The notes under the pieces are model-generated. The model saw only the letters and a program-made list of their open reading frames with translations, was not told the DNA's origin and searched no databases. A program made the position numbers and the translations under genes. Source: Mytilus edulis (lineage: Eukaryota). Taken from it: DNA of 64,000 bases. The DNA lies in contig NC_092345.1 in NCBI RefSeq assembly GCF_963676685.1, positions 82,460,001 through 82,524,000 on the forward strand. The letters are read 5' to 3'. Below, piece after piece: positions 5,263-62,340 of the stretch; position 1 is the first letter of the stretch, and every line of letters begins with the position of its first letter.

Positions 5263-6525
5263 TTATGAAGTTCCCTGTACTACATCAATGATAAACATTA
5301 AATTGGAACCAATAAACATCATCATATAAGATATAAGAGAAATGTAATCAAATGTTTTCGAGACATCTTGCCACGTAACTTCCTTTTCATTTCTATGCGA
5401 ATCGTCAACCTTCTCTTTCCTAAATAAAGCTTCATCTTTATCTTTATGTCTGCCAGCCCCAGTACTTTGGCCATCATGAACTCTGTTTTTAGCTCGACAA
5501 CAAAGCTGGAATGCAACAATTTTCTTCATCCAATTCGGAATTGGCTCATCCTCTGATTTGAAATAAAATCTAGAGCTCACGATGACGGATCCTACAATTA
5601 AACCACTCATCATGAAATCAATCATGAGAAATATACAAATCGAAGAAAGTCTTGGTAAAGCGGTGGCCGGAAGAAGCGCTTGTGCGATCGTTAGATATAA
5701 TACAACAGCTAATAAAAGAGTTACTGCAAATCCAATCCTTTCTCCAGAGTCGGTCGGCAGGAGGAAGACACCAATGTTCAAAAGAACAAGAAAAACACAC
5801 GGAAGTATTAAAGTCATTGTTAAGAACAGTGGACGTCTCTTGAAGTAGAAGGTAAAACTTGCATTTGGTGTTCCTGTGTTATCTACTGTAACATATGTAT
5901 TACTTAGTTCCCATTCACTATTTATAGAATATAAAGATGTCTGAATCGTTGAATTAAGAGAGTCAAAAGTAATGTCTTGAGCAGCATGTCCCCATGTTAC
6001 TATAAGCAAAGTACATTGTTGAGTATCAAAAGGAAAGTACGTTATATCGAAGCTGCAAGTGAACTTCAAATTTTGTCCCGGAAGCCATGTAATTTGTCCG
6101 TTATAACGTACATACAAGGATAATTCATCCATACCAAACATTGCCATTTCTTGTGCACTATTTGAATTTATCAGGGGAGGTTTCCAAATAACATTTTCAG
6201 GTAAAACAATATACTCTGCATTACCGTGATCGGCAGGGGTCCATGCCATATTATTATCTGTCCATTGAATGTTAAAATAACCAGTTATAGAAACTGTTCC
6301 ATCTACTTCATTAATATCCTGCAAATTCAGTAAATGAAAGTCTATAGATATTACTGTAGAACTGCTTAAATCTACCTCAGGTCTTAAGTGCTTGTTATGT
6401 CCGGAGGTAAGTGTTGTGTACAAAGAATCCATATCCACAAAAGATGTTGCATCGGTGAGGGAAAGAAAACATACACATAGAATTACAAATTTACAACTTG
6501 CTTTTCGGTTATTACTGAACTTCAT
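5263..6525 (-). CDS. Single-ORF nAChR-like Cys-loop channel subunit, type A copy 1 (420 aa)
   Basis: Signal peptide, LRP, WxD..W, WKPP, Cys-loop CSFDITYFPFDTQQC, EW, RRP, M1 to SGER to M2, and four TM segments. No YxCC. Confidence 0.95.
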   Translation of the reverse strand: MKFSNNRKASCKFVILCVCFLSLTDATSFVDMDSLYTTLTSGHNKHLRPEVDLSSSTVISIDFHLLNLQDINEVDGTVSITGYFNIQWTDNNMAWTPADHGNAEYIVLPENVIWKPPLINSNSAQEMAMFGMDELSLYVRYNGQITWLPGQNLKFTCSFDITYFPFDTQQCTLLIVTWGHAAQDITFDSLNSTIQTSLYSINSEWELSNTYVTVDNTGTPNASFTFYFKRRPLFLTMTLILPCVFLVLLNIGVFLLPTDSGERIGFAVTLLLAVVLYLTIAQALLPATALPRLSSICIFLMIDFMMSGLIVGSVIVSSRFYFKSEDEPIPNWMKKIVAFQLCCRAKNRVHDGQSTGAGRHKDKDEALFRKEKVDDSHRNEKEVTWQDVSKTFDYISLISYMMMFIGSNLMFIIDVVQGTS

Positions 6526-7329
6526 TGTATATCAATTGATATTTATTATAATTGCACTTCCAATGCTACCTTCAACTTTTAAAAGTTGAACTAAGTATTT
6601 CTTTCGCAATAGTAGTTAACGTTGATAATAATTTAAAAGAACACAAGTGTATAATGTATTTAATTAAGTTAATGACCCTCGTGTTTACGTAGCATTAAAC
6701 AATAGATAGCAAAATCTATTTGAACTTAATGGACCTTTTAAATAAATTGTGAGCGACAACTTATGTGATATTTGATAGAGTCATTTGTCATATAGACAAC
6801 GTCATTTGATCGTCAAATGTTTGGTTTGAAATTTGTAAAATAAATAATAATCTGAATAGCAGTAACTATCATACAATAAAACAAAGTAAATCATTTAAAT
6901 TTTTCGTGGAGCAAGTAATATATTGATAATTCACTCTCCTTTTTTTTTAACAGCAGGACGATAAGCAAACAATCATCAATCAATTAATATTTATCTTTTA
7001 AAACAATTACTAAGAAATGTTGACAAGAAACGAAACTGTTCAATAAATCATTTTTGATCTTTGTACTCGGGAAACGCACAAATTAATTGAGTAAAGTTTG
7101 AAAAATTCGGTGCTGAGAAGTATGCTTTTGTCCTTATAAATTACGTTAGATTAAACTGAATAACGTCTCTTCATTGAAACTATTTGGACATTCAAAACCT
7201 AATACAAACGTTTCTTAGAATTGATATTACCAAACGGACCTCAAGTATAACCAAACTCAGACAAAAAAATCAAAGACCTGCATTTAAAAAAAAAAAAAAG
7301 TAAAACCACAAAATACTAAACTTCTAGAA

Positions 7330-7700
7330 AATTTCAAAACGAAAAATACCCTAAACAACACGAATAGACAACAACTTTCGTATTCCTGACTTGGTACTGG
7401 CATTTTCTTATGTAAAAAATGGTGGATAAAACCTGGTTTAATAGCTTAGCTAGCTTAACCTCTCATTTTTATGACAGTCGCATAATGATCCATTATATTG
7501 ATAACGATGTGTGAACAAAAACACAATAGGTAAAAATGTTAAAAATAGGGGTACAGCAGTCAACATTGACTGTGCTATTATCTTAACCACTATAAAAAAA
7601 AACAAATATGTTAGCACAAATTTATCATGACGGGATGTACAAGTACAGAGCCACGTCATTTGTAACAAAGAAACACAAAAAGGCATATAGACAAACAATT
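7330..7700. repeat. Interspersed SINE-like repeat (core ATTCCTGACTTGGTAC)
   Basis: Related copies at about 8620-8950, 16950-17250, 27580-27950, 44880-45170, 55020-55460 and (reverse) 60200-60320. Confidence 0.55.
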
Positions 7701-9323
7701 TCCTTCGTTTTTCAATGCATATTTCACAAAAATAAATCGTATTTTCTGGTAAATATCGAAGTACTGAACTACTGGGCCGAGGATACATTCGAAGACTTAC
7801 AGTTCACCAGTGGGGGTATTTGCCCAGTAATGATTATACTAAACGATGCCAATTTAACTCGACCAGATAGGCATTTCGAAAAATAGTGTTTCTTCACAGA
7901 GGCTTAAGTCCAAGATTACAAATAAACAATCAATGTATGTCAATCTCATTTATACTGATCAAAATAAATTTGAATTGAAAATTAAATACAGGAGTTACAA
8001 TTAATAGTTTAAAGGGTTATTTAAAGTACACTTCGGGTTTTAAATATTTCATATCTGTTGACTTTTGTTAAGGTAGCTCAATATCCGTGCAAATATTACA
8101 TTAATATTTAGAATACGGTTTGACTAGTTATACAGTTGCTAATTGAGAGAGGTTTTACCGGAAGGATATTTTGACTGCCATTAAAAATTTGGACAGAAAT
8201 TTTCATTCTTCTTCATTGCTTTCAATCTAAGAAAATAAACACATGAAGAATGAAGACTTTCAAAAATCAATTACCTCAAATTCCCCCTTATAAAGCACTC
8301 ACTTTATAAAGAAAGATATTCAATGATGAGACTCCAGACATAGGACAGACACAGGCACTTTAACATTAATTCCATAACAACAAAGTAGCAAAGAAAAAAA
8401 TACAAAAATATCAGATTGAAAAAAAATTATGATATAGGTGGTATATCAACAAAATCTCAGGTGCAGGTATAACACTAAATAATTCTGTTTTAAGGAGTAA
8501 TCTCGGTTATTCATATAATTGTGTGCCGTACCATGGTCATTTTCGGAATATATCACATACACCAACATCACGAATACTACAGGAAAACACGTTATTGGGA
8601 AATGCCAAAATGACAAATAAAGGCAACAGTAGTATACCGCTGTTCGAAATTCATAAATCGATTGAGAAAAAAGCCGGATTATAATCTAAAACTGAGGGAA
8701 ACACATCAAATATAAGAGACCTACGACACAACAGAAACACGACATTAAAATGGAACACACACAGAAACGAACTATAATATAAAAATGGCCATTTTCCTGA
8801 CTTGGTACAGGACTTCAATAAAGCAAAATGGTGGGTTGGACCTGGTTTTGTGGCATGCCAAACCCCCCACTTTTATGGCAATGTCGAATATAACATTACA
8901 ATGAAAACATTACATGATAGGACTATACACTACAAATAAATGGGAAAACAAACGTTTTACTATCTCGACTGTTACCAATGCTATATGATTTAGAGTCTTA
9001 GAATATGATATGACATGTAAATGATTGGATATATAAACAAGTAAACATTGTTTATCAATCTTCGTTTACTTTTCATTGATAAAAATCGTGTCTCCATATT
9101 GAATTAATTCAAATATTCTTTTATTCACTTTTGATATACTTTTCCATCATTACTCATTAGCTAATACAAAAAGACTATAAGAAAGAATTGTGTACAGCTA
9201 TTCAACTAACATCTACTATTGTCAATCTAACATTATTTCCGGTTTCGTCAAGACTCTTGTGGCTACATTTATGCTGGATACATACATAATAGACGATACG
9301 TATCGTGTGAGCCACCTGGTCAT

Positions 9324-9741
9324 GATTCGGGCGTCACTGATGAGTCTTTTGTAGACGAAACGCGCGTCTGGCGTAAATTTAAAAAATCAATCCTGGTATC
9401 TATGATGAGTTTATTTACAACCACTGGGTCGATGCCAATGCTGGTGATTTATTTCCCCGAGGGTATCACCAGACCAGTAGTCAAATCACTTCTGTGCTGA
9501 CATGAGTTATCATTGATATGTTTATAATCATAAATTAGCTGTTACCAAAACTTTGAATTTTTGAAATACTAAGGCTTTCTACCTCAGGAATAGATTACCT
9601 TAGCTGTATTTGGCAAATCTTTTAGGAATTTTTGGTCCTAAATTCTCTTCAACTTCGTCTTTAATTGGGTTTTTAACATTTTTTGATCGAGCGTCTGTCG
9701 CAAATAAAAAATTTCAATCCTGGTATTTATGATGAGTTTAT
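9324..9741 (+). mobile_element. Retrozyme-like repeat (about 360-nt monomer between hammerhead-bearing direct repeats), unit 1
   Basis: Direct repeats GCGTC...AATCCTGGTAT(C/T)TATGATGAGTTTATT at both ends. The 5' copy has an intact hammerhead; the 3' copy has lost the 33-nt core. Confidence 0.8.
9331..9374 (+). ncRNA. Minimal type I hammerhead ribozyme
   Basis: Stem I GCGTCA/TGGCGT, core CTGATGA, stem II GTCT-tttgt-AGAC, GAAA, palindromic stem III ACGCGCGT, GUC cleavage site after 9368. Confidence 0.88.
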
Positions 9742-10390
9742 TTTATACATATCTAGTTCGAATTCACTCCACGTCTGTGTGTTATTTATTATGTGTATCA
9801 AGTATAATGGACTGCCAATGATACAACTATCTACCGAACTTCAAATGAAGTGGATGTGTCTTCATGAATGAGAAAAACACATATCGAATAGTCGGCTTTA
9901 AAAGGCCTGACATAACAAATATGAAACAATTTAATTGAGTAAACCAACGGCCTAATTTATAACAAATTAATTACCAAAATATACTTAACAACTTAAGTAA
10001 CACACCACCTTCATCAATTTCTTTGCAGTACAAATGAATTTTTTAAATTATTATATATGGTCAAATGTGGTATGTAAATGTATTACTGAAAATACGCCTA
10101 TTAAAACGTTTAAACCCGCTTTATTTGTATGCACCTATCGTTAGTTAGGAACCTGATGTTCAGTGGTAGTCGTTTGTTGATGTGTTTTATAAGTGTTTCT
10201 GGTTTGTTGTTTTTGCATAGATTACCCCGTTGGTTTTCGTATTTGATTGGTTTTTTTTTTCGGGATGGGGGATTGATAGCTTGTGTTTGGTCTAAGATAA
10301 GGCTTCGTGTGTAAGGCCGTACTTTGACCTATAATGGTTTACTTTTAATGGACTTGAATGGAGAGTTGTTTCATTGGCACTACATCTTCT

Positions 10391-11588
10391 ATTATTATAC
10401 CTTACATATATTTCAAACAATTCTATTGGGTGATACGTTATCACGTGACATGGAATAATTCAGTTAATTAAGGAATAACAGTACTATAGTTGAAGAGTTG
10501 CCACCGTCAATTGTAGATTTGACGGTCGAAAATGCAGTTTTACTGGCGACGCGTAGCGGAGACCGTCAAACGGAGATTTGCGACCGTCAAATCAAAATTG
10601 ACGGTGGCAACTCTTCAACTACAGTACTGTTATTCCGATTCTGTTGCATTACAAAAAGAAAAAATACGATAAAACTTGATAAGTTGTCTAAATTTGACAA
10701 ATAGAAAAAAAATCCGCGAAACGTCATGAAAGCTTTTGGCACAAAGACGTCATGGCTAAACGTGACGTCATACAAATGAAAAATTACAAACTGGAGGTTA
10801 TTACGTTACCTGTACGCTTCAAATTCGGATAAAATTACATTAAAACGGCGAATTCGAGGTAGGTGTCGTTTTATTTTCGATTATATAGTAGTAATCGAAC
10901 ATTTGTTGATTCAACCAATTCAAAATGGCGGGTCCCTTCTTAGTTACGCCTGGTCAACTGTGGATTTGACGACAACTTTTAGCCAATGAAAAAAAATATT
11001 ACATCCAAATTGCATTCGAAATTTCTTTCAATTGCAAGGAAGGACGAATAACCCTAAACATTTACACTAGCGTTGAATAACCCTATTATTAACCGGGGAA
11101 TAACCTTTTGAGTTTGTTGATTTGTACTTGAGTTACATGAAAATGACGTAACAGACGTAAATAAACAAAATGGCAGCATTCACGCTACACTGGAAGCCCA
11201 TCGAGAGACGACGAAATAAGGCATTGGACAGGAATAGAGCTGAGAGTGCCAGAAGCAGATGATATCTCTTATAAACGGTCCTTTTCGGGGCCATCAATAT
11301 TTTACGAAAAGATTCTACTTTTGTTGTAATTTCAAGAAATGCGAACACAAATGTATTTTCAAATGTCAGTCTGTGTGTTATGTTAAAAATATAGACTAGT
11401 TAGTGTTCGAAATGCCCTTCCACTGTTAATTCGGTATAATAAAACAATTGTTGCCCCTTAGAATGGATGAATATCCAAAATTGTCAACCCTTAAAAGTTA
11501 TTTCACTTCGGGCTGCGCCCTCAATGAAATAACCTTCTCGTGTTGCCAATTTTGGATATTCACCTTTTCAACAGTCCATAATTGTATA
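10391..11588. mobile_element. Insertion with two long internal hairpins (possibly nested non-autonomous Crypton-like elements)
   Basis: Absent from unit 3 (empty site at about 59078). Hairpins at about 10472-10636 and 11443-11585. Copy at about 30639-31836. Superfamily call is tentative. Confidence 0.6.
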
Positions 11589-13438
11589 ATATCTATCCAA
11601 AAATAAGTAGTCCAAGAAGGACTATACCATTATAGTGTTTTTTTATTGGAACATCACTAATAAATCAGGACAGTATATCTTTGCTAAAAAAGAAAATATT
11701 GCCATAAAGACATTGATTAACTTATTCATGTTTTCTTGAATTTGATACATTCACTATAATATGTGCAAATTCGACAAGTTCTCAAAACATCTATTCTTGT
11801 TTGGCCAAAATTGAATCTTCACGTCCTGCTCTTGTAAGACTTGATGATTTTATATATGGTGTCTTGAATTTTTTTACCTTTAACGGGTTTAAGATAAGAT
11901 ATTTTTTTTTATATTCTATCAATTGTACGTGATTAAATGTTGGTTTTGCATTAATCAATTTATATAACTATAACGGTAATAACAATTTCTCCCTTTAGAA
12001 TGTAACCTAAACATTGTTTTCGTCTAAATTATATGACGTTATACAAATACAGTGCAAATTTACGGAACAAATAAGTTTATTCTTTTGATAAATTAATAGC
12101 ATTTTAGTATGAATTAATTTCAGGTTCTTAAACATTTATTTGACGTAATTACTTCATTCATTACTAATGAGTACATTAATGATTTTTATCTTCATGATGT
12201 AGTCAATGTTTCATCATCAGTCATGACCTTAATTTGACTGTCGATTTTTCCCCTGCGAAAGCTATGGATGCTAAGTACTTGACTAGTAAATGTGAACTCC
12301 TCATATTTTGGCTGTCTTAATTATAAGCGTAGAGTGTTAAAGATGATTTGTTTCCTCTTTTTAACGGAAAGGAGGCATATTATTATTTTTTCTGCTTTGT
12401 CTACCATAATGTTTTAGTAAAATAAAAGATGTGGAAGATACTAAGGGGACATTCAAAACTCATAAGTCGAAGACACAGTAACAATGCCTTAGCAAAAAAT
12501 CGATGATAACAAAAAGACAAACGAGTCCACATACACTTCATACAAAACTAAAAATGAACGCCACAAAATACTGTAAGTGATCTTAGGTGCTCCCATGGGA
12601 TAAGAAAATGTTTTCAACTAGTGGCATGGATCAACTTAATTGGTCAAGATCAGTACAATTTAGGTAATAAGTCTCATTCTGTCATGTTACAATCGTGTAC
12701 AAAATGGGGAAGATTGTGGTAATGATATTTTAAAGCATATCCGCTGATATCTCCGACACAGATATCCCATAAATTTCGTAAAAGTGTCAATAAAAATTTC
12801 AAAGGGGTGAATTCAACCTAAATACTTCGAACCCTTGTTTTAATAGCTTCCTTGAAAGCTGTTATCATCTAACAAGGAAATCATTATAAGAAACATGGAA
12901 TATCGTATCAACTGGGAGATATATATATTCATCTTACCTCCTATACATTTCTAAGAATATCATTGGTTAAAAGCAACCTCGGGGAGACCGTGTATATTCC
13001 ATTTTAGGTTAGTAGGTGGGTGGAGCTTTTCAATACACGGTTAGTAGGGGTGTTACGTCCCTTTATAAAAGCAAAATGGAACTGAGAAAAAATCATAAAG
13101 GTTTCAACAGACAATGAATGATAGAAATAAATACATAAAACACATTTAAAGCGTACAAGTGGTTCTTGTTGACATTCGTTTTTGAATAATCAACGATCAA
13201 TGATCAAAGGAAGTATAAAATTGAGAATGGAAATGGGAAATGTGTCAAAGAGACAACAACCCGACCATAGAACAGACAACAGCAGGAGGTTACAGTTTCT
13301 TAATGCTTATGATATTGAAGACTATGATATGTCACTAGACTAATGCAACATGTTAAAGTAGTCGGTAAGATAAATTTGTTACATAGTGCACTAGTGACTT
13401 AATACGGTATATATGTGGGCAGTAAATTCCATATGGGG

Positions 13439-13960
13439 TTTTTAAGTCAATATGCAAAAAACTAATCTCTGATTCTGGATAAAAACGAGGATTCTCTTAA
13501 ACAAGCTTTGTATATATTTGACTGCCTCGCTGCTGGTGCTGGTTTGCTATTAAATATAGATAAAACTGAAGCCATATGGGTTGGCAAAAGATCAGCCTGT
13601 AATGCAACTCTGCTACTAAATAAGAAATTATAATAGAATGCATCAGGAAAGTTTAAATTGTAGTGAATTCGTACTGACTGTTCTGATATTAATGCCAAAT
13701 CCACCAGTTTAGGTTATGCAAAAAATGAAAGGAATTTTAATCAAATTATTATGAGCTGGAAAGCCAGACAAAATAAAAAGGAAGTATTAATGACAAGGGA
13801 GGTTTAAAACTCTTCCATATAAAAAGTGTTGGTATGTACCTTGAAATGATTAGATCCCTTCAAGTTTCCCCTTGCAAGATTTCATCATTAAGTTATATAG
13901 AAAACAAGTGAGGGAATAAACTCGTGCACCTAACTTAAGAGGGTTTTGAAGCTATTGCAA
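13439..13960 (+). pseudogene. Degenerate L1/Tx1-like RT fragment
   Basis: LSQYA..., DSLKQALYIFDCLAAGAGLLLNIDKTEAIWVG. Copy at about 41650-42290, with further upstream RT remnants at about 40800-41100. Confidence 0.55.
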
Positions 13961-14553
13961 AAATGTTAGATTAGATTTAATAAAATAATGATCTAGTATT
14001 TTAACATATGTTTTTAAAGTTAACTTTTATTAATCTATAAAGAGTTACCGTTGTGAAATGCCTAAGGGAAAATTTTAATAAGTCAAGTGTTTGAGGTTAA
14101 TTACATTTTTACAGTTAAAAGGGAAAGTACAAGATTTTTCGAAAAATTCACACCAAATTAAAAGACCTTTATTATTGATTTAACATTATCCAATTGGTAT
14201 CAATTCATGACACAAAATCACTACGAAAAAAAACCCCAAAAAAAGTAATAGCACTTTTTTGCTGTTCCTCATCTTCAATTCCAATCTGAGAGAGGGCTCC
14301 ACTATGGTGTAAGTTTGTTCTCTCATTGCAGTTTTAAGACAACTCATAGCACTTGTTTGGATAGAAATCTTTACAACATTTCAGCCACGATACAAGTCGG
14401 CATAAAAGGGGCACTTTTGCACGATTCCAACCGTTTAGTTAAAATATATGTATATAAGATTTGTTTTGTCCCAATTTAAATAGTATTTATATATGCGATG
14501 AGCACGTCCTTTCTATCTATTATGAAGTTTGAGTTACTATCAGTTCTAGACGT

Positions 14554-15780
14554 TTATTCCATTCCCTGTGCAACATCAATGATAAACATTAAGTTCCCAG
14601 CAATGAATGCCACGATATAAAATATAAGTGAAATTGTATCAAAAGTTTTTGAGACATCTTGCCAAGTAATTTTCTTCGTATCACCATTGTATGCTATGCA
14701 ATGCTCAACTTTCTCCTCGTTTCCAAGATCATGAACTTGATTTTTTTCTCGACAACAAAGCTGGTATGTAACGATTTTTTTCATCCAATTTGGAATTGGC
14801 TCATCATCACTTCTGTAATAAAATCTAGAGCTCACGATGATGGATCCTACAATTAAACCACTCATAACAAGATCAATCATAAGAGTTACACAAATTGCAG
14901 AAATTCTCGGTACAGCGGATGCTGGAAGTAGTCCTTGTGCAATCGTGAGAAATACTACTACAGCTAATAAAAGAGTCACTGAAAATCCAAACCTTTCTCC
15001 TGACTCTGTCGGTAATAGAAAAACACCTATGTTCAAAAGTGCAAGAAAAATAACCGGAATGATCAATGTCATGAGTAAAAACATTGGACGTCTCTTAAAG
15101 TGGAAGGTATATGTTACCGTTGGTGTTATGGTGTTGGATACATTGACTGACGTTTTACTTAGTTCCCATTCACTATTCGTAGAATATGAAGATGTTTGAA
15201 CGGTAGAAAGTGGCGAGTTGAAAGAAATATCGGAAGAAGAAACTCCCCATCCTATAATTTGCATAGAACACACTTGTGTATCAAATGGAAAATAAGTTAT
15301 ATCAATATCACATGTGAACTTCAAATTTTGTGCTGGGAGCCATTTAACTTGTCCGTCATAAAGTACATATAATGATAAATCATCTGGATTGAAAATTGAA
15401 AATTCTTTAGCACTGTTTGAATTAATCAACGGAGGTTTCCAGATAGCGTCTGCAGGTAATATCATATACCATGCATTGTCGTAATCGGTTGTAGTCCATA
15501 TCATACTGTTATCTGTCCATACAACATCAAAATAACCAGTCATTGAAACTATTCCTTCAACTGCATTTATTTCCTGCAAGTTTATTATATAAAATTCTAT
15601 GGTAATTACTGTAGGATCGTCAAGATCTACCTCAGGTCTTAAGTATTTGTTATGTCCAGATGTAAGGTTTTGGTACAAAGAGTTCATTACGTTAAAAGAT
15701 GCTGCATCGGTGAGAGTAACAAATAATACACATAAAAATGCTCCTGTGAATTTGGCTTTTTTATTGTAATTTGATTCCAT
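14554..15780 (-). CDS. Single-ORF nAChR-like Cys-loop channel subunit, type B (about 408 aa)
   Basis: First ATG (15780) precedes the signal peptide; the track's GTG start at 15819 is unlikely. Cys-loop CDIDITYFPFDTQVC, SGERFGFSVTLLL, four TM segments. No YxCC. Confidence 0.93.
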   Translation of the reverse strand: MESNYNKKAKFTGAFLCVLFVTLTDAASFNVMNSLYQNLTSGHNKYLRPEVDLDDPTVITIEFYIINLQEINAVEGIVSMTGYFDVVWTDNSMIWTTTDYDNAWYMILPADAIWKPPLINSNSAKEFSIFNPDDLSLYVLYDGQVKWLPAQNLKFTCDIDITYFPFDTQVCSMQIIGWGVSSSDISFNSPLSTVQTSSYSTNSEWELSKTSVNVSNTITPTVTYTFHFKRRPMFLLMTLIIPVIFLALLNIGVFLLPTESGERFGFSVTLLLAVVVFLTIAQGLLPASAVPRISAICVTLMIDLVMSGLIVGSIIVSSRFYYRSDDEPIPNWMKKIVTYQLCCREKNQVHDLGNEEKVEHCIAYNGDTKKITWQDVSKTFDTISLIFYIVAFIAGNLMFIIDVAQGME

Positions 15781-18700
15781 CGTGATATAGTAATATTTTT
15801 CTTCAACTGCTACGTTCACCTGGTTTTAGGTACTTTTGGACTGACCAAGTATATATTTTTAAATTTAATTATGAGATTAAATATTAATGACTTGTTCGTG
15901 ACTAGAACACAATAACCATTGGATTAAATCATAAATATTTTCATTGGAGCAAACGATACATAAGTATATTTCTGTTGACCATTTAAAATCATATTTACCT
16001 TATAAAATTTAAAGTGGCATAATGCAAGTGATTCTCTTGCATTTCTTTTGTTTGTTAAAACACTGTTGTAAATCAAATGTAATGTTTAAACGAAAGTTTA
16101 AAGTTATATGATGAATTAAGTCTGTATTTACTTGACACAAGGTCAATATGAAAGCTCAATTTATGTAATTTGAGATTCTTTCAAGGTATATATGATGCTC
16201 TTTATATAATTCATGAAATTTTGCATACTATCCCAAAGGAAACACCAAACCAGTTTAGTAAAATATATTCCTTGCTATGAAAACGTATATATACATGTTA
16301 AGATTGCTATACGAATGCATTTTCTTGCTTATCTATTCATATTCACATGTATGATTAGAAAGGATCGTATGCAAAGAGTAAAATCATAAAAATACTGCAA
16401 GCAATAGTCTTCAGAGGTCATTCAGATGGTATATTTTCTAAATACTGATACATGAAAACGGGTCCATGCATTGTTAATTGCCTTTTGGACAAAAAAAAAA
16501 CACTCACCAAAGTTACCAGCTTTTAATTTTGTAAGTAAAACTCGCATATCGTCTTCAACAGACTCATCAGTGAGGTTCAGATAAAAAGGTCAATGGTAAA
16601 ACGAAGTACACATTATGAGAGGCGCCAATTTTGTTTTGTGTCAAACAGAGCGATAGCTCATGTAAACACATGAATACTTTAATACTACTGAGCTGAGGAT
16701 AACCTTGGTGAACCTTCATCAGCAGTGGCATCAACCCAGTGATTATAAGCTTCTTATTTTCTTTTCTTAATAAATAATAAAGATAAGTCAATATGTATTA
16801 TCATGGATGCTAAAAGAACATAGTTAAACAGACAATCATACAAAAATAATTAAATGCGATTGTACTCAATATGAGGTGAGGATGGGAAGTTGCCACATAA
16901 ACTGTACTCAACTCGCAGAATAAAGTAAACAAAACAACCCAAGGAAAATGCAAAACAGAAAGTCCCTTATTGTAAAATCAAAAGCTCAAAGAGATCAAAC
17001 GAATGGATAACAACTGTTATATTCCTGACTTGGTACAGGCATTTTCTTATGTCGAAAATAGTGGCTTAAACATGGTTTTATAGCTAGCTAAACCTCTCAT
17101 ATGTATGACAGTGAAAAACGAAACAGGGAAGCCGTGAATCTTAATCACTAAAAACAAACAAATATGTCAACAAAATGACATATAGACAAGGCATATTTGA
17201 AAAAACGAAAGAAAAGAATACAAATATAGAAAACCATAGAATGTTACTATAAATTTTAAAACGGACTAATTTAAGTGATCGTACTTTTGTCGCAAAGACT
17301 CATCCTGAGAAAAAATCAATTATAAAGCGGATCGAATCCCAGTTGTATATCTAGTATTCTTTATTTTAGTTTTAATTGGATATGAGATGATCATTATAGG
17401 TTTCCAAACGAGTGTCGATTAAATATTACTACTAGGGATGTCAACTCGTTGACGATTTACTAATCGATTACTTGTCATAACACTGCAGGACGTCAAACAA
17501 GCAGCATATAAAAGTACAGGAAATAAATGGCAGAGAAGATGGGAAATATCTGAGAGAGGCAGGGACCTTTATGAAAAAATACCAACTACAAAACACCCAA
17601 TTATTTATGATTTCCCAACTAAATGACATTACAGTATGTTCGCCCAACTAAGAACTGGCTATACAGAACTAAACTACTACAAGAACCGAGTAGGCCAAAC
17701 CAACGCCATAGAGTCATGCAACTGTGGAGCACCTAAAACGCCTCACCATTTTCTTCTGGTGTATCCCTGCTTTGAGAACGAACGAGAAGATATATAACAT
17801 CAAATATCCAAAGAGGTCGGGTCAGTAACCTGAATTTAGCTACTATGCTAACGAGGCTGGACGGCGAGAACACAGAAGAGACAAAAGCCAAACTACAAAC
17901 ACTAGCACATTACATTGACAGAACAGGCAGATTTAATACTGCTGTTCCTCAATCCCAATCCTAACCAGCGCATACCATTTTCTAATCACAGAGAAGAAAA
18001 TACGTCGAGGAAAACGCACCATTGGGACAATTCGTGCCAACAGGCCTTAAGATTGAGGATTGAGGATCGTTTGATTTACCGAGCGATACTCTATACACGG
18101 AGCAACAAAATTGTTTTTGTCTGTGACTTTTTGTCCGTGACTTCTTGTCCTACTTTCATATAACCCTTACCCTAAATAATCAACTTACTTACTTATAGCA
18201 TGTGTAAAATATTTATGTAAGTTTACAACATTGTTTTAGCATTGCATTTGATCATGATCGTTAGTATTTTTAATGTTTTGTCATTTGGTCTACATCTTAC
18301 TGGTCTGAACACTTTGTTTCGACAGGAGCGGATGTTGCAGGTATCAGGTATTGCTTGATCATACGATGTGTGGATAGAGGAGGGAATGTGTTCCTATTAA
18401 CTTGTCAATACATTAAGGGGTATTTTGACAACTCAGAAATGAAGCCATTCGACACAGTTTGGAGAAACGGCCTATGGTTTAAGATGGCATTGAATCACAT
18501 TGATGGAAAAATGACAAATAGTATGTACAACAATATAAAATCACGAGTTATATACAATAATAAAAAATCTGATTTTTTCCCATGTAACACTGGAGTTAGA
18601 CAAGGGGAAAATCTTTCCCCTCTATTATTCTCTTTATATATCAATGACCTCACTGATTTTTTGCTATCACATAATGTGAAAAGTTTGTCATCAATATCGA

Positions 18701-48948: not shown

Positions 48949-50378
48949 GTATTAATACTAAGCTTACTGCTTCTTAACAACCATAATTTATTTATCATAC
49001 TTATACACAGAAAGTATTTCTTTATACAATTTTAGCTTTTACATTTGACTGTATAAGTATATATATATTCTTTTATATGTTATCTGATCCGAAATTTTAT
49101 GCATTTTTATTTTTGTTATTATGTATATTATTTTTTTTTTAACTTCTCTGTAACCTTTGTACTTACATGGTTTTATGAGAATAAACTATCTATCTATTAA
49201 ACATAATATTATATAGGAATAAATAAAAAATTTGTCCCTTGTTTTTTATCACTTTATAATTATTCAAAAGTATGCTTGTCATTAGATTGAAAATAATTTT
49301 AGTACAACAAATGTATAATGTCTAATTATTAGCAAAATTTTGCTAATGAGATAATCATGATAATATACATGTAATAATGACATTGTCCCTAGGCTGTTTT
49401 ATTACACATTTAGTCTGATTAATTGCCATTTGTCTTTAAAGCTGATAATTTTTATTTCTATAATCCTTTTGTGTTTACTTACTTGACAAAATGATTGTGT
49501 GCAGTGATTTAAAATTCTAAATGAACTGTCTTAGAAAGATTTACACATTTTTTTAACCATACATACATGTATTGATGGTATTTACAAACATGTTATCACT
49601 CTATGTAGATAAAGATCTTTCTTAAAAACTAAACAACACCAATATGTGAGTCATTTTTTTTAAAGTTAAAAGACTATTTATCAAACATTTCTGTGTGTCA
49701 AATAAATAATATGTATATCAATAACACAATTTCTTATCATTTACATCATAAAAGTACATGTAATTGAAATGTAATTGAAAAGTTATTTAAGCATTACATG
49801 CATTTTTCATTGTAATTAATTAAATTTCCTACATGTAATTACAAAAATGCTCAATTACACATTACATTCAATTACATGGAAAATTACAATGCATTACACT
49901 TAATTACCTTTACATTTTCAATTACCCAATCCCTGTGTGGGAGGGACTAAAATTAGCTAAAAGTGTAAGCCTTGGAAAAAAATGCTCGTGTTCATATATC
50001 CTACACGTTTTTCTGTTTGGAGAAATTTTAAATGACAGTTAAACGCAAACATTCGAATTGTATTTTTTTTTTTTCATTTTGATTAATCTATAATTTCCAG
50101 GAAAGCGCTCTCAATAAAACTATTTTTTGTTTAAACTTAAGAGAGCAACAACATTATAACAGGAAAACGATTAGTCGAGTATCATTTTGATAATCGATAC
50201 TCGATACTACCGAGCGATACTCGAGTACTCGAGTACTCGTTGACACCCCTAATTATTACTACTTTAATTTCATCAACTAATTTTAAATAGGAAACAACAA
50301 ATTGTTTGTGTATATTTCAGAGGAGAACATTTATGAGAAATTTAAAGATGGATATAACAGTAATTTCTATAATTTTAG

Positions 50379-50471
50379 GTAGAGGATAATAATCCTGGCT
50401 ATAAATTGGATAACTTCTGTATACCTAAACATTATGAAGAGGATCTAAAGAGAGTTTTAGTTCCAGCAGGA
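50379..50471 (+). pseudogene. HPRT1: Orphan HPRT exon-2-like fragment with upstream splice acceptor
   Basis: TTTTAG followed by [31 protein letters not shown], compared with human HPRT [31 protein letters not shown] (recalled sequence). Confidence 0.8.
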
Positions 50472-51322
50472 AAAATAACGAGATTTGATATCAATCGATA
50501 TCCAATTCGCACAAGTTGTTATACCTATATCTCTTATGTTTGTCTTTTTTTAGCCATGGCGTTGTCAGTTTATAATCGATCTACGAGTTTAATTGTCCCT
50601 CTTATATCTTTTGTCCCTCTTTTATGTCAACACTCTCATTCCGCGAATCGTTGCAATAGTCTTTTGAACATTTTAGTATGACGTCATATGTTCTTTTCCG
50701 TTGTCAAAACTAACATTTTCATACTTTTTGTGTGCTTCAAAATGTAATACAAATGACATCATGAATATTGTTCGGTGAAAAGTGTGAGTGTTTTGTATAT
50801 TATAGAATATGTCCGTTGCCATGGACGAAATGTACATCGTCGTAAATTTTAAAAGGCATCAATGGCATAACGAATAGCCAATTGAAATGTTGTAATAACA
50901 TCTTATGATACTTGATAAGCCAATCAGATTAACGCAAATTACAGTATCACTTTTTCGTAACACACTTCGTGCGGTGTGATACGAGAAATATCTATTCACG
51001 CAAGACATAGATAACAGGCCAGATAATGCTCACGTTAATAATTTTATACACAATAATCAATAAAGTATAACAGATATTTTTTTGGGGGTATTACAAAAAA
51101 ACATCACAAACTTTTCCTTCGCGACTATATACGCACGAAGAAGACAAACAACAATAAAAAAAACAGTCCTTGTAGCCCGACTTGGAAAAGACACAACATT
51201 TGATGGGGTTACACAAGCATGATTGTCGTGCGCACATACCTCTTCTGTTAGCTACCTAAATCATATGCTGCCTTATTCGAATAAACAAAATTAGGTGAAA
51301 AGACGAAAACAGCTGTGAATGA

Positions 51323-52585
51323 TTATGAAGTTCCTTGTACAACATCAATGATAAACATCAAATTGGAACCGATAAACATCATCATATAAGATATAACGGA
51401 AATGCAATCAAATGTTTTCGAGACATCTTGCCACGTAATTTCTTTTTCATTTCTATGCGAATCGTCAACCTTCTCTTTCCTAAATAAAGCTTCATCTTTA
51501 TCTTCATGTCTGCCAACCCCAGTACTTTGGCCGTCATGAACTCTGTTTTTAGCTCGACAACAAAGCTGGAATGTAACAATTTTCTTTATCCAATTTGGAA
51601 TTGGCTCATCTTCCGATTTGAAATAAAATCTAGAGCTCACGATGACGGATCCTACAATTAAACCACTCATCATGAAATCAATCATAAGAAATACACAAAT
51701 TGCAGAAATTCTCGGTAAAGCGGTGGCCGGAAGTAGCTCTTGTGCTATAGTTAGATATAATACAACAGCCAATAAAAGAGTTACCGCAAATCCAATCCTT
51801 TCTCCAGAGTCAGTTGGCAGGAGAAAGACACCAATGTTCAAAAGAACAAGAAAAACACACGGAAGTATTAAAGTCATCGTTAAGTACAGTGGACGTCTTT
51901 TGAAGTAGAATGTGAAATTTGTCATTGGTGTTCCTGTGGTATCTACTGTAACAGATGTATTACTTAGTTCCCATTCACTATTTATAGAATAAAAAGATGT
52001 CTGAATTGTTGAATTAAGAGCGTTAAACATAATGTCTTGAGCGGCATGTCCCCATGTTATTATAATCAAAGTACATTTTTGAGTATCAAAAGGAAAGTAC
52101 GTTATATCGAAGCTGCAAGTGAACTTCAAATTTTGTCCCGGAAGCCATGTAACATGTCCATTATAATGCACATACAAGGGTAATTCATCCATTCCAAACA
52201 TTGCCATTTCTTGTGCACTATTTGAGTTTATCAGAGGAGGTTTCCAAATAACATTTTCAGGTAAAACAATATACTCTGCATTACCGTGATCGGCAGGGAT
52301 CCATGCCATATTATTATCTGTCCATTGAATGTTAAAATAACCAGTTATAGAAACTGTTCCATCTACTTCATTAACATCCTGCAAATTTAGTAAATAAAAG
52401 TCTATAGATATTACTGTAGAACTGCTTAAATCTACCTCAGGTCTTAAGTGCTTGTTATGTCCTGAGGTAAGTGTTGTGTACAAAGAATCCATATCCACAA
52501 AAGATGTTGCATCGGTAAGAGAAAGAAAACATACACATAGAATTACAAATTTACAACCAGCTTTTCGATTATTACTGAACTCCAT
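51323..52585 (-). CDS. Single-ORF nAChR-like subunit, type A copy 3 (420 aa)
   Basis: About 92% identical to copy 1 by eye. Cys-loop CSFDITYFPFDTQKC. Confidence 0.95.
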   Translation of the reverse strand: MEFSNNRKAGCKFVILCVCFLSLTDATSFVDMDSLYTTLTSGHNKHLRPEVDLSSSTVISIDFYLLNLQDVNEVDGTVSITGYFNIQWTDNNMAWIPADHGNAEYIVLPENVIWKPPLINSNSAQEMAMFGMDELPLYVHYNGHVTWLPGQNLKFTCSFDITYFPFDTQKCTLIIITWGHAAQDIMFNALNSTIQTSFYSINSEWELSNTSVTVDTTGTPMTNFTFYFKRRPLYLTMTLILPCVFLVLLNIGVFLLPTDSGERIGFAVTLLLAVVLYLTIAQELLPATALPRISAICVFLMIDFMMSGLIVGSVIVSSRFYFKSEDEPIPNWIKKIVTFQLCCRAKNRVHDGQSTGVGRHEDKDEALFRKEKVDDSHRNEKEITWQDVSKTFDCISVISYMMMFIGSNLMFIIDVVQGTS

Positions 52586-53044
52586 GGTATATCAATTGAT
52601 ATTTATTATAATTGCTTTTCCAGTGCTACCTTCAACTTTTAAAAGTTCATCTAAGTAGTTCTTTCGCAATAGTAGTTAACGTTGATAATAATTTAAAAGA
52701 ATACAAGTGTATAATGCATTTAATTAAGTTAATGACCCCGTGTTTGCGTAGCATTAAACAATTACTATAGATAGCAAAATCTATTCGAACTTAACGGAGC
52801 TTTTAAATAAATTCTGAGCGACAACTTAATCTGAATGTATGTGATATTTGATAGAGTCATTTGTCATATAGACAACGTCATTCGATTCGTCAAAAAACAG
52901 GAACCGTTTGAAACTAAGTGTTTGGTTTGAAATTTGATCGCAAAATAAATGATAATCTGAATAGCAGTAACTACAATACAATAAAACAAATTATATCACT
53001 TAAATTTTTCGTGGAACAAATAATATTTTGATAATTCTGTCTCA

Positions 53045-54483
53045 TTTTTAGCTCACCTAGCCCAAAGTGCCAAGTGAGCTTTTTCCATCACTTTGCGTCC
53101 GGCGTCCGGCGTCCGGCGTCCGGCGTCCGGCGTCGTTAACTTTTACAAAAACCTTCTCCTCTAAAAATACTGGGCCAAATTAAACCAAACTTGGCCACAA
53201 TCATCCTTGGTGTATCTAGTTTTAAAAATGTGTCCGATGACCCGGCCAACCAACCAAGATGGCCTCCATGGCTAAAAGTAGATCATAGGGGTAAAATGCA
53301 TTTTTTTGCCTTATAACTCAAAAACCAAAGCATTTAGAGCAAATCTGACATGGGTAAAATTATTTATCAGGTCAAGATCTATCTGCCCTGAAATTTTCAG
53401 ATGAATCGAACAACCCGTTGTTGGGTTGCTGCCCCTAAATTGGTAATTTTAAGGAAATTTTACTGTTTTGGGTTATTATCTTGAATATTATTATAGATAG
53501 AGATAAACTGTAAACAGCAATAATGTTCAGCAAAGTAAGATTTACAAATAAGTCTACATGACCGAAATGGTCAGTTGACCCCTTTACACAGCTACTTTTT
53601 CATAGGTACTATTTCTGTACTAAACATTTGTAGTACTGGAAATTTACTTTTAATATTTAGTACTATTTTTTTACTTTAAAAATATTGTAATATTTAGGTA
53701 CTTGTATTTTACAGTACTTGATTTGTACTAAATATTTTGGTACAAAAATAATACAATATTCCATGTTTGAAAATCATAATTTAAAGAGATTTGAAATAAG
53801 AAAAACTTTCAAAATGCTGAAAATGTAACGGTAGTAACCAAAAATCTAAAGTACTTAAATTTCAAGTACAAATTAAGTACTGTAAAAAACAGGTACCTAA
53901 ATATTACAATAATTTTAAAGTAACAAAATAGTACTGAATATTAAAAGTAAATTTTCAGTACTACATATTTTTAGTACAGAAATCTGACTGGGTAAAATTG
54001 TTAATCAGGTCAAGATCTATCTGCCCTTAAATTTTCAGATGAATCGGACAACCTGTTGTTGGGTTGCTGCCCCTAAATTGGTAATTTTAAGGAAATTTTA
54101 CTGTTTTGGGTTATTATCTTGAATATTATTATAGATAGAAATAAACTTTAAACAGCAATAATGTACAGCAAAGTAAGATTTACAAATAAGTCAAATGACT
54201 GATATGGTCAATTGACCCCCTAAGGAGTTATTGTCCTTTATAGTCAATTTTTAACCATTTTTATAAAATTTGTAAATTTTTACTAACATTTTCCACTGAA
54301 ACTACTGGGCCAAGTTCATTATAGATAGAGATATCTGTAAGCAGCAAGAATGTTCAGTAAAGTAAGTAAGTACAAACACATCACCATCACCAAAACACAT
54401 TTTTTTCATGAATCCATCTGGTTCCTTTGTTTAATATTCACATAGACCAAGGTGAGCGACACAGGCTCTTTAGAGCCTTTAGT
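53045..54483 (+). mobile_element. Non-autonomous Helentron (HINE-like) element
   Basis: Begins TTTTTAGCTCACCT, subterminal inverted repeat AGGTGAGC at 54450, (GCGTCCG)n microsatellite, internal repeats, and 3' hairpin AGGCTCT-tt-AGAGCCT. Absent from units 1 and 2. Confidence 0.8.
53586..53983. mobile_element. Foldback/MITE nested in the HINE
   Basis: About 120-bp inverted arms (53611-53730 vs 53865-53983) rich in AGTAC. Right terminus truncated. Confidence 0.7.
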
Positions 54484-61125: not shown

Positions 61126-62340
61126 ATGGACATTGCTTGGCTGTTAGTTTTATTATCAGTTCCACAAGTTCTTCAGATAAATGCATCGACATATTCTGAA
61201 ATCAGCTCTCTTTATCATACATTGACGACTGGATACAATAAATATCTGCGACCTCAATCGGATTATTCGGAAGCAGCACACCTCTACATCTCAATGAATA
61301 TACTAAATCTAAAGGAAATAAATGCTGTTGAAGGAACTGTTACAATATCCGTGTATTTCACTTTACAGTGGGACGACTTCAACTTGAAATGGACGCCAAG
61401 TAGCTTCAACAACACAGAGTATGTAGTTTTACCAACAGACCAAGTCTGGAAACCACCACTTATTAATTCCAATACCGCTAAGGAATTCAGCATGTTTGGC
61501 AATACAAATTCATATGTTATAATACATAACAGTGGAATAGTCACTTGGCAGCCTGGCCATCAGTTGGAATTCTCATGTAATATAGACACGACATATTTTC
61601 CCTTCGACACACAGAAATGTACACTGGATGTAATAACTTGGGGGTACAATATGGGTGATATTTATTTCACACCAACCCGTTCAAATATAGATACAATACA
61701 TTATGTTGAGAACAGTGAATGGGATATGACATTTACTTCCGTTGTATCAGAAGATGGTCCGCCTCCAACCACAAAATTTACAATGCATTTAAAGCGTCGT
61801 CCATTATATTTGATCATTAATTTGATATTTCCAGTAATTCTATTAGCACTTCTTAATATAACAGTATTTCTTTTGCCACAAGATTCTGGGGAACGTGTTG
61901 GATTCGCAATCACTCTGCTGCTTTCTATTGTTGTATTTTTAACCATTGCGCAAGGACTTCTTCCAGCAACTGCGCAACCAAGACTCTCCGCTGTTTGCAT
62001 AGTGCTAATCTTGAATATGGTAATGAGTGGTATGATAACTGTGTCTGTTATTGTAAGCGGGTGGATTTATTACAAGCCAGAAGATTATGATGTACCAAAC
62101 TGGATTCAAAAAGTTATTCGCTTTAAACTGTACCATCGACCCACTAATACAAACCAGGTACATGTGATAAATGTTCAAAATGAAAAGACAATAGACAAAC
62201 CACTATTCGACGGAAATGAATCAAAAGTTACTTGGCATATGGTCGCTAAATACTATGACAGGATTTCGCTCATATTTTATGTTATTTGTTTTGTGTGCGG
62301 ACATGTCTCTTACGCTATTGATATTGTAAAAGGAGAATGA
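61126..62340 (+). CDS. Single-ORF nAChR-like subunit, type C (about 404 aa)
   Basis: ATG at 61126 directly precedes the signal peptide; the track's TTG start is unlikely. Cys-loop CNIDTTYFPFDTQKC, SGERVGFAITLLL, four TM segments. No YxCC. Confidence 0.94.
   Translation: MDIAWLLVLLSVPQVLQINASTYSEISSLYHTLTTGYNKYLRPQSDYSEAAHLYISMNILNLKEINAVEGTVTISVYFTLQWDDFNLKWTPSSFNNTEYVVLPTDQVWKPPLINSNTAKEFSMFGNTNSYVIIHNSGIVTWQPGHQLEFSCNIDTTYFPFDTQKCTLDVITWGYNMGDIYFTPTRSNIDTIHYVENSEWDMTFTSVVSEDGPPPTTKFTMHLKRRPLYLIINLIFPVILLALLNITVFLLPQDSGERVGFAITLLLSIVVFLTIAQGLLPATAQPRLSAVCIVLILNMVMSGMITVSVIVSGWIYYKPEDYDVPNWIQKVIRFKLYHRPTNTNQVHVINVQNEKTIDKPLFDGNESKVTWHMVAKYYDRISLIFYVICFVCGHVSYAIDIVKGE

What the first reader, a model, noticed from the sequence alone, without database searches (positions are those of the whole stretch)
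5263..62340. Tandem array of intronless nAChR-derived channels lacking the ACh site: candidate bivalve chemosensory receptor family
Seen: five intact single-ORF Cys-loop subunits of three types. Loop C is short and has no YxCC or Tyr (e.g. VTVDNTGTPNAS), loop A has no Tyr (PPLINSNS), and loop B keeps W (TWG/GWG). Known: intronless, tandem, ACh-insensitive nAChR derivatives form the cephalopod chemotactile receptors, and bivalve nAChR expansions are reported but largely uncharacterised. Inference: these are non-cholinergic ligand-gated cation channels, possibly a convergent contact-chemosensory system (foot, mantle, larval settlement). Heteromers of types A, B and C are possible.
Basis: partly seen in the sequence, partly recalled or inferred. 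Interest (0 to 1): 0.85.

Follow-up and report, generated by a model that had tools for sequence, protein, structure and literature searches.

The report
Mussel orphan nicotinic-like channel gene array
This stretch of a blue-mussel chromosome carries five intact, intron-free genes for nicotinic-receptor-like ion channels that have lost the acetylcholine pocket; the sequence reading holds, but this is one ordinary example of a bivalve gene expansion already described, and the proposed taste or smell role is untested.

Summary
The window comes from a Mytilus edulis chromosome. It holds five intact single-ORF Cys-loop subunit genes of three types (A1, A2, A3; B; C), plus a deleted B relic. A sixth, frameshifted B copy lies just upstream of the window.

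All five genes keep the channel core: the Cys-loop, the -1' Glu of the GER motif and the 9' Leu. They also keep the loop B Trp. They lack the loop A Tyr, both loop C Tyr and the vicinal Cys pair. Loop C is 7 residues shorter than in human alpha3, and the loop D Trp is replaced by Tyr.

The genes are under purifying selection (dN/dS 0.17-0.35), and orthologues exist in four other Mytilus species. The array grew by duplication of a segment of about 17-20 kb carrying one B and one A gene.

This is not special to the window. The same genome holds at least 100 scored such loci out of 364 candidates. None of the 30 nearest paralogues has YxCC. Jiao et al. 2019 described this intronless, tandem bivalve expansion, and a 2026 preprint raised an ionotropic chemosensory role for divergent molluscan nAChR clades. 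This scan has already noted at least seven like arrays elsewhere in this genome.

A non-cholinergic cation channel is the best reading.

The parts
5263..6525 (-). Gene A1: intact single-ORF non-alpha nAChR-like subunit, 420 aa
   Evidence: ORF. Pfam LBD and TM domains. Alignment to human alpha3 at E 4e-45. AlphaFold2 model with mean pLDDT 80.8 and canonical pLGIC fold.
14554..15780 (-). Gene B: intact single-ORF subunit, 408 aa from the ATG at 15780; 65% identical to A1
   Evidence: the exact 408-aa protein is on record. Sister clade to A in the tree.
25511..26773 (-). Gene A2: 99% identical copy of A1, with 5 amino-acid differences including N221K in loop C
   Evidence: dS 0.007. It lies in an 11.3-kb block that is 99% identical to the A1 block.
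42849..43075 (-). B-type pseudogene relic: only the 3' 230 bp or so of the CDS remain, with a frame break
   Evidence: tblastn at 85-94% identity to the B C-terminus in two frames. The flanks align to the B block, with B CDS 14786-15782 deleted.
51323..52585 (-). Gene A3: intact, 92% identical to A1; groups with the M. trossulus A orthologue
   Evidence: (dS 0.16, dN/dS 0.22).
61126..62340 (+). Gene C: intact single-ORF subunit, 404 aa from the ATG at 61126; 47% identical to A1; opposite strand
   Evidence: Sister to the L008/L009 clade at C2:72.2 Mb.
2151..13442 (.). A1 duplication block, matching 22404-33683 (the A2 block) at about 99% identity
   Evidence: Self-blastn, run with places 7272-7315 masked.
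13438..18953 (.). B duplication block, matching 41649-46808 at 93-95% identity; the later copy has lost about 1 kb of the B CDS
48949..53049 (.). A3 block, matching 3105-6944 and 23352-27192 at 92-96% identity
465..2777 (+). Reverse-transcriptase (RVT_1) retroelement fragment that is part of every duplication unit; further copies at 17270-18953 plus 22404-23024, and at 45198-47426
   Evidence: Pfam RVT_1, ORFs, self-blastn.

Best explanation
The window holds part of a seven-locus array on a Mytilus edulis chromosome. The order is B2 (frameshifted, just upstream of the window), A1, B, A2, B relic and A3 on the minus strand, then C on the plus strand. The genes are intron-free and encode non-alpha nAChR-like Cys-loop subunits. 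They belong to the large bivalve expansion of such genes that is already published. Each intact gene encodes a complete subunit with a signal peptide, a ligand-binding domain, four membrane helices and a short M3-M4 loop. The pore keeps the hallmarks of a cation-selective gated channel. The orthosteric pocket has lost four of the five acetylcholine aromatic-box residues and the loop C disulfide. As homomers, or as heteromers among themselves, these subunits therefore cannot bind acetylcholine in the canonical way, and they most likely respond to another, unknown ligand. The array grew by unequal recombination of a unit of about 17-20 kb (B gene, retroelement fragment, A gene), and copies are also being lost. 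The shown steps are gene integrity, family placement, loss of pocket residues, conservation of pore residues, purifying selection, orthology within Mytilus and the duplication history. The inferred steps are pentamer assembly, cation conductance, non-cholinergic gating and any physiological role.
For: Five intact ORFs carry the Pfam LBD and TM domains. The best solved relatives are human alpha3, alpha6 and alpha4, Torpedo alpha and 5-HT3A, at E 4e-45 to 3e-41. The AlphaFold2 model has mean pLDDT 80.8. VIA Z is 30-32.5 to muscle, alpha7 and alpha4beta2 nAChR chains and 28.9 to 5-HT3A. Pocket residues against alpha3 are Y93S, W149W, Y190V, CC to VD, Y197T and W55Y, and loop C is 7 residues shorter. 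The DSGER -1' Glu and the 9' Leu are invariant in 42 relatives. dN/dS is 0.22-0.25 for A1 or A2 against A3, 0.31-0.35 for A against B and 0.17 for B against C. It is lowest in the TM helices (0.08-0.24) and highest in loop C (0.5-0.95). Column entropy is highest in loop C (2.03), loop B (1.79), loop F (1.76) and loop E (1.60), and lowest in M2 (0.60), loop A (0.72) and the Cys-loop (0.74). Types A, B and C each have orthologues in M. trossulus, M. galloprovincialis, M. californianus or M. coruscus. The genome holds at least 100 scored single-frame paralogues out of 364 candidates, in tandem arrays on many chromosomes. None of the 30 nearest has YxCC. Jiao et al. 2019 (PMC6896357) report 99-217 nAChR genes per bivalve, mostly intronless and tandem, with few conserving the ACh site. 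The duplication blocks are shown.
Against: There are no expression data. No RNA run on record holds the gene, and 14 small runs that hold 46-73% of its words are only guessed to be RNA. There is no functional assay. Vertebrate non-alpha subunits also lack the loop C Cys and Tyr residues yet serve in ACh-gated receptors, so loss of the principal face alone does not prove ACh-independence. The orphan relative Alpo4 gave no current with any ligand tried (PMC10338036), so some members of such expansions may not be classical ligand-gated channels. A1/A2 and B/B2 differ by dS of only 0.007-0.008, which is within the range of allelic divergence in mussels, so part of the copy number could be an assembly effect.
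Confidence: 0.75

Rival explanations
1. These are peripheral chemosensory receptors. In this reading the channels sit in foot, mantle edge, gill or larval sensory cells, are gated by environmental molecules, and are convergent with cephalopod chemotactile receptors.
For: They share the intronless, tandem, ACh-site-less architecture of the chemotactile receptors (PMC11526382). Variation is concentrated in pocket loops C, F, E and B, while the pore is conserved. Evolution is by gene birth and death, with a relic and a frameshifted copy. The subfamily was found only in Mytilus and unnamed metagenome or Logan sequences. Jiao et al. find the highest expression of bivalve nAChR genes in gill, where ChAT is not expressed. 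The MolluscaGenes preprint raises an ionotropic chemosensory role for divergent clades.
Against: No expression or ligand data were obtainable. Loops C and F are the most variable parts of all Cys-loop families, so that pattern is not specific. dN/dS in loop C stays below 1. Chemotactile receptor structures show no special closeness: CRT1 has Z 23.0 at 26% identity and CRB1 has Z 22.8 at 20%, below nAChR, 5-HT3A and GABA-A chains. Jiao et al. link the bivalve genes to early development, stress and immune responses instead.
Confidence: 0.18
2. These are structural or complementary non-alpha subunits. In this reading they co-assemble with canonical YxCC alpha subunits into ACh-gated receptors and diversify cholinergic signalling.
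For: Vertebrate beta, gamma, delta and epsilon subunits likewise lack the loop C cysteines and tyrosines (established knowledge). Human beta2, beta4, beta1 and delta chains match at E 1e-35 to 1e-38. The loop B Trp and an aromatic residue at the loop D position are retained.
Against: The canonical complementary-face Trp (loop D W55) is replaced by Tyr or Phe in most of these 30 paralogues. Loop C is unusually short. More than 100 such genes is far more than a set of alpha partners would seem to need. Oysters have only 13 alpha subunits with the principal ACh-binding site fully conserved.
Confidence: 0.15
3. The genes are silent or decaying duplicates, and the A1/A2 and B/B2 copy number is partly an assembly artefact in which two haplotypes were laid out in tandem.
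For: dS is 0.007-0.008 between A1 and A2 and between B and B2. B2 has a 1-bp homopolymer frameshift and one B copy is deleted. Jiao et al. report that more intron-poor nAChR genes have no or low expression.
Against: dN/dS is 0.17-0.35 between types and against A3. Intact orthologues exist in several species. A single M. galloprovincialis contig also carries two A-type and two B-type proteins. The window has no N gaps. The two units differ by a 3.45-kb transposon insertion and have different downstream flanks.
Confidence: 0.07

Closest known systems
Bivalve/lophotrochozoan expanded intronless nAChR-like genes (Jiao et al. 2019, BMC Genomics, PMC6896357)
   Same: Bivalve host. LBD-NTM architecture. 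Intron-free coding sequence. Tandem arrays made by stepwise lineage-specific duplication. Most members do not conserve the ACh principal site. Pseudogenised copies occur.
   Different: That study did not include Mytilus; its mytilids were Bathymodiolus and Modiolus. The subfamily here has the loop A motif WKPPLINSNS and was found only in Mytilus and unnamed environmental or Logan sequences. It has not been described individually.
Cephalopod chemotactile receptors (CR518, CRT1, squid CRB1)
   Same: nAChR-derived, intronless and expanded in tandem. The ACh aromatic box is lost. The pore is pentameric and cation-type.
   Different: Different class of mollusc. No special sequence or structural closeness: 20-26% identity and Z 22.8-23.0, below vertebrate nAChR chains at Z 30-32, and not among the 60 best PDB sequence hits. 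The CR pocket is rich in aromatic and hydrophobic residues (Y58, W122, F124, F192), whereas loops A and C here are polar and carry glycosylation sequons (S, N, T, D). Sensory expression and ligands are known for CRs and unknown here.
Alvinella pompejana Alpo4 orphan nAChR-like receptor (PDB 8bx5; PMC10338036)
   Same: Lophotrochozoan nAChR-like subunit without the loop C vicinal disulfide. The loop B Trp is kept. ACh-insensitive orphan from an expanded family.
   Different: [quoted passage not shown] The mussel proteins have T at 16' and have lost most of the aromatic residues. Identity is 20% and Z is 25.2.
Vertebrate non-alpha nAChR subunits (beta2, beta4, delta) and 5-HT3A
   Same: Same fold and same cation-selective branch. 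E values are 1e-35 to 1e-41. No vicinal Cys in loop C.
   Different: The vertebrate genes have multiple exons, keep the loop D Trp and have long M3-M4 loops. The mussel genes are single-exon, have Tyr at loop D, a short loop C and an M3-M4 loop of about 60 residues.

Membership tests
Cys-loop pentameric ligand-gated ion channel superfamily | Neur_chan_LBD plus Neur_chan_memb domains | tested here: met
   All five ORFs match at E 1e-39 to 1e-42 (LBD) and 1e-12 to 1e-15 (TM).
Cys-loop pentameric ligand-gated ion channel superfamily | C-x13-C Cys-loop with the FPFD motif, four TM helices and the pLGIC fold | tested here: met
   A1 reads CSFDITYFPFDTQQC, and the same pattern is in all five. The model has helices at 232-255, 262-281, 295-321 and 385-417. 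Foldseek E is 1e-32 and VIA Z reaches 32.5 to nAChR chains.
Cation-selective nAChR/5-HT3 branch | -1' Glu (GEK or GER) intermediate ring and 9' Leu gate, not the PAR motif | tested here: met
   DSGER with E262 and L272 is invariant in 42 aligned relatives. Conductance itself was not tested.
nAChR alpha subunit (ACh principal face) | Loop C YxCC vicinal cysteines | tested here: not met
   There is no Cys in loop C of any of the five genes or of the 30 nearest paralogues.
nAChR alpha subunit (ACh principal face) | Aromatic box: loop A Tyr, loop B Trp and two loop C Tyr | tested here: not met
   Only the loop B Trp is kept. Y93 becomes S, Y190 becomes V and Y197 becomes T against human alpha3.
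Bivalve expanded intronless nAChR-like genes (Jiao 2019) | Bivalve genome, intron-free CDS, tandem array, LBD-NTM architecture | tested here: met
   Mytilus edulis. Single ORFs. Seven loci in 67 kb. Domains. Many further arrays in the genome.
Cephalopod chemotactile receptors | Membership of the CR clade in a phylogeny | tested here: inconclusive
   CR sequences could not be brought into a tree with these tools. Indirect evidence gives no special closeness: CR chains are not among the 60 best PDB sequence hits, and CRT1 and CRB1 score Z 23.0 and 22.8 at 26% and 20% identity. The preprint PMC13174522 reports a CR-like clade that includes bivalves, but these genes could not be placed in it.
Cephalopod chemotactile receptors | Expression in sensory epithelium and gating by poorly soluble environmental ligands | not testable with these tools
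No RNA holder is on record. No assay was possible.

The most novel reading that the evidence does not exclude
The Mytilus-restricted WKPPLINSNS clade (types A, B and C and their relatives) is an environmental chemoreceptor family. In this reading it acts in gill, mantle edge, foot or pediveliger larvae, and it arose independently of cephalopod chemotactile receptors from the same nAChR stock. Bivalves would then sense surfaces or water-borne cues through hundreds of ionotropic nAChR-derived receptors.
Probability: 0.15. Interest if true: 0.7.

Novelty: new member of a known kind. Interest (0 to 1): 0.3.

Why it matters
Bivalves carry 100-200 or more nAChR-like genes whose ligands and roles are unknown. 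If even some prove to be environmental sensors, that would be a second independent recruitment of nicotinic receptors for chemosensation. It would also be relevant to mussel settlement, biofouling and aquaculture. This window adds no new principle. It gives a clean, recently duplicating example: three intact types, datable duplications, orthologues across Mytilus species, and a conserved pore with a variable pocket. Those genes could serve as expression constructs for de-orphanisation. As a discovery it ranks low, because the class is published, the genes are annotated in RefSeq, and the same pattern recurs across this genome.

Tried and rejected
- **Read laying.** The call was counted and the cap is 1, so no read-level expression, UTR or splice evidence was obtained. 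No letters of 7272-7315 were sent to any search tool afterwards, and they were masked with N in the self-comparison script.
- **Sequencing runs.** The look-up of sequencing runs found no holder on record as RNA. Fourteen small runs, guessed to be RNA, hold 46-73% of the words. This is a hint only.
- **Paper search by accession.** A search for the protein accession numbers found nothing. A Mytilus coruscus settlement transcriptome paper mentions only alpha-9-like and alpha-10-like receptors, not these genes. The van Giesen 2020 paper was not held.
- **Tree with chemotactile receptors.** No tool gave CR sequences as usable ids. Two homologous-protein searches returned named hits mostly from Mytilus, with single distant hits from a clam, a nemertean and a hemichordate, plus unnamed sequences. 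The tree therefore has no CR, and it is the quick SH-aLRT tree, because the careful search did not finish.
- **Protein atlas.** It returned only generic Neur_chan clusters.
- **Complex prediction.** It was not run. Any two Cys-loop extracellular domains would be expected to dock, so a pass would not separate homomers from heteromers.
- **Pfam on neighbouring ORFs.** ORFs at 19214-19666, 19921-20811, 27760-28134, 35241-37704 and 39712-40041 gave no family.
Full report
**What is there.**
The window has no N runs and is about 32% GC. Six ORFs exceed 250 aa, and five of them are Cys-loop receptor subunits:
- A1 at 5263-6525(-)
- B at 14554-15819(-)
- A2 at 25511-26773(-)
- A3 at 51323-52585(-)
- C at 61078-62340(+)

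The ORF lister uses bacterial start codons. The real starts of B and C are the ATGs at 15780 (408 aa) and 61126 (404 aa), and those exact proteins are on record in public collections. All five match Pfam Neur_chan_LBD (E 1e-39 to 1e-42) and Neur_chan_memb. Each ORF contains a signal peptide, the extracellular domain with a C-x13-C Cys-loop, M1-M3, a short M3-M4 loop of about 60 residues, M4 and a stop. The coding sequence therefore has no intron. Introns in untranslated regions could not be examined.

**Source.**
The proteins are held by NCBI on a contig of 108,102,362 bases that also carries a named Mytilus edulis RefSeq protein. Close relatives are named in M. trossulus, M. galloprovincialis, M. 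californianus and M. coruscus as 'acetylcholine receptor subunit alpha-like' or 'hypothetical'. The window is G000:C2:82460001-82524000 of a 1.37-Gb assembly.

**The binding site.**
HMMER aligned A1 to human alpha3 (6pv7_A). I counted the binding-site positions from that alignment by hand:

| alpha3 residue | Loop | A1 residue |
|---|---|---|
| Y93 | A | S121 |
| W149 | B | W178 |
| Y190 | C | V212 |
| C192, C193 | C | V214, D215 |
| Y197 | C | T219 |
| W55 | D | Y83 |

Loop C is 7 residues shorter than in alpha3. Only one of the five aromatic-box residues is conserved, one more is a conservative Trp-to-Tyr change, and the vicinal disulfide is gone. The same holds for types B and C.

The pore is conserved. 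The sequence LP(T/Q)(D/E)SGER carries the -1' Glu. The 9' Leu and a Thr at 6' are present. E262 and L272 are invariant in a 42-sequence alignment of relatives. This is the cation-channel signature, not the anion-type PAR motif.

**Fold.**
An AlphaFold2 model of A1 has mean pLDDT 80.8, and only the M3-M4 loop is disordered. Foldseek gives E of about 1e-32 to muscle, alpha7 and alpha3beta4 nAChR chains. An all-against-representatives structural search gave the following:
- muscle nAChR, alpha7 and alpha4beta2: Z 30-32.5
- 5-HT3A: Z 28.9
- GABA-A and GluCl: Z 26-27
- Alpo4: Z 25.2, 20% identity
- octopus CRT1: Z 23.0, 26% identity
- squid CRB1: Z 22.8, 20% identity

The protein is a canonical nAChR-branch subunit with no detectable special closeness to the cephalopod chemotactile receptors.

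**How the array arose.**
Self-comparison, with places 7272-7315 masked, shows three blocks:
- 2151-13442 matches 22404-33683 at about 99%.
- 13438-18953 matches 41649-46808 at 93-95%.
- 3105-6944 matches 48949-53049 at 92-96%.

The third unit has lost B CDS 14786-15782. This leaves the relic at 42849-43075, which also has a frame break. A sixth copy, B2, lies about 3.6 kb before the window start. It is 99% identical to B. A 1-bp insertion in an A-run right after the start codon leaves only a 377-aa frame without a signal peptide.

The order on the minus strand is A3, B relic, A2, B, A1, B2. This is a unit of B gene, reverse-transcriptase fragment and A gene, present three times. C sits at the end on the other strand. 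Synonymous divergence is 0.007-0.008 for A1/A2 and B/B2, 0.15-0.16 for A3 against A1 or A2, and about 0.65-0.73 for A against B. It is saturated for comparisons with C.

**Are the genes functional?**
dN/dS is 0.22-0.25 for A3 against A1 or A2, 0.31-0.35 for A against B and 0.17 for B against C. It is lowest in the membrane helices (0.08-0.24) and highest, though below 1, in loop C (0.5-0.95).

Across 22 members of the subfamily, column entropy is highest in loop C (2.03), around loop B (1.79), in loop F (1.76) and in loop E (1.60). The mean for the extracellular domain is 1.45. Entropy is lowest in M2 (0.60), loop A (0.72) and the Cys-loop (0.74).

In a quick maximum-likelihood tree:
- A and B are sister clades, each with 100% SH-aLRT support.
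- The A clade contains M. californianus, M. coruscus, M. trossulus and M. galloprovincialis sequences. The B clade contains M. californianus, M. trossulus and M. galloprovincialis sequences.
- C has M. trossulus and M. edulis orthologues and is sister to a pair at C2:72.2 Mb.
- A3 groups with the M. trossulus A gene, and A1 and A2 group with the M. galloprovincialis A gene.

These are maintained genes with a conserved channel and a variable pocket. The same pattern is common to Cys-loop families in general.

**Context that lowers the novelty.**
Searching the same genome with A1 scored 100 of 364 candidate loci. All 100 match at E of 6e-40 or better, and 95 have no internal stop. Nearly all have open frames of about 390-440 aa. 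They lie in tandem clusters on at least 13 of the large contigs. Among the 30 nearest, none has YxCC, all have a short loop C, all have GER or GEK, and most have Tyr or Phe at the loop D Trp position.

Jiao et al. 2019 (PMC6896357) reported the following:
- 99-217 nAChR genes in five bivalves, two of them mytilids
- mostly intronless genes, in tandem arrays formed by stepwise lineage-specific duplication
- in C. gigas, 33 of 132 genes are alpha-type, and only 13 of those 33 conserve the principal ACh site
- highest expression in gill, where ChAT is not expressed
- responses to stress and infection, and more silent genes among the intron-poor ones

The MolluscaGenes preprint (PMC13174522) describes a CR-like clade that extends to bivalves. 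It explicitly raises an ionotropic chemosensory role for divergent molluscan nAChR clades. The Alpo4 study shows that a lophotrochozoan receptor of this kind can remain an orphan after extensive ligand screening (PMC10338036). This scan's own notes list at least seven other windows of the same genome with the same reading.

**What could not be shown.**
Expression could not be tested:
- The look-up of sequencing runs found no holder on record as RNA. Fourteen small runs guessed to be RNA hold 46-73% of the words of a stretch that is 70% CDS. This is compatible with transcripts but is not evidence.

A tree containing cephalopod CR sequences could not be built, because no tool returned them as usable sequences. 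The two homologue searches returned named hits mostly from Mytilus, plus unnamed sequences. Heteromer formation was not tested.

**Verdict.**
The statement that these are non-alpha, probably non-cholinergic, cation-type channel subunits is well supported by sequence. The rival reading, that they are complementary partners of alpha subunits, is not excluded. The chemosensory interpretation is an analogy without data. It applies equally to more than a hundred paralogues and has already been raised in the literature. The finding is a new, cleanly resolved member of a known kind.

Noticed in passing
window 18954-22403: A 3,450-bp insertion interrupts the reverse-transcriptase fragment of the second duplication unit only. 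It is flanked by a TT(T)AA target duplication and has short terminal inverted repeats (AAAGGCCAGGG... / ...CCCTGGCCTTT). It carries two ORFs without a Pfam match (19214-19666 and 19921-20811, minus strand). About five further full-length copies at 90-97% identity lie on other chromosomes. It looks like a recently mobile, low-copy DNA transposon of unclear superfamily; the TTAA target recalls piggyBac.
   Followed up: partly
L005:2560-2800 (G000:C2:82455202-82456401, about 3.6 kb before the window start): A sixth array member, B2, is 99% identical to B. It has a 1-bp insertion in an A-run just after the start codon. Only a 377-aa frame without a signal peptide remains, and RefSeq annotates that frame. 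It is either a very young pseudogene or a homopolymer sequencing error.
   Followed up: partly
window 38017-38424 (+): An isolated ORF matches the C-terminal end of Endonuclease_NS plus the EXOG C-terminal domain (E 4e-12). It lies in the 8-kb unique stretch between units two and three. No other endonuclease exon was found among nearby ORFs, so it may be a last exon or a gene fragment.
   Followed up: partly
window 465-2777, 17270-18953, 22404-23024, 45198-47426 (+): Fragments of one retroelement with an RVT_1 reverse transcriptase (broken ORFs) lie in the same orientation in every duplication unit. They could have served as the substrate for the unequal recombination that copied the B-A unit.
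   Followed up: no
window 5850-5915 (loop C of A1) and its counterparts in A2 and A3: N-glycosylation sequons in loop C differ between the near-identical copies. A1 has NTG and NAS. A2 loses NAS through N221K. A3 loses both through N216T and N221M.
   Followed up: partly
(proteins P0007, P0008, P0012 and their clusters): Relatives at 44-50% identity come from ENA and JGI/IMG metagenome assemblies, and some are named 'nicotinic acetylcholine receptor' there. They are probably host DNA of another mytilid in symbiont or environmental metagenomes.
   Followed up: no
They lie in the duplicated intergenic block upstream of A1. They were left alone and masked in later work.
   Followed up: no
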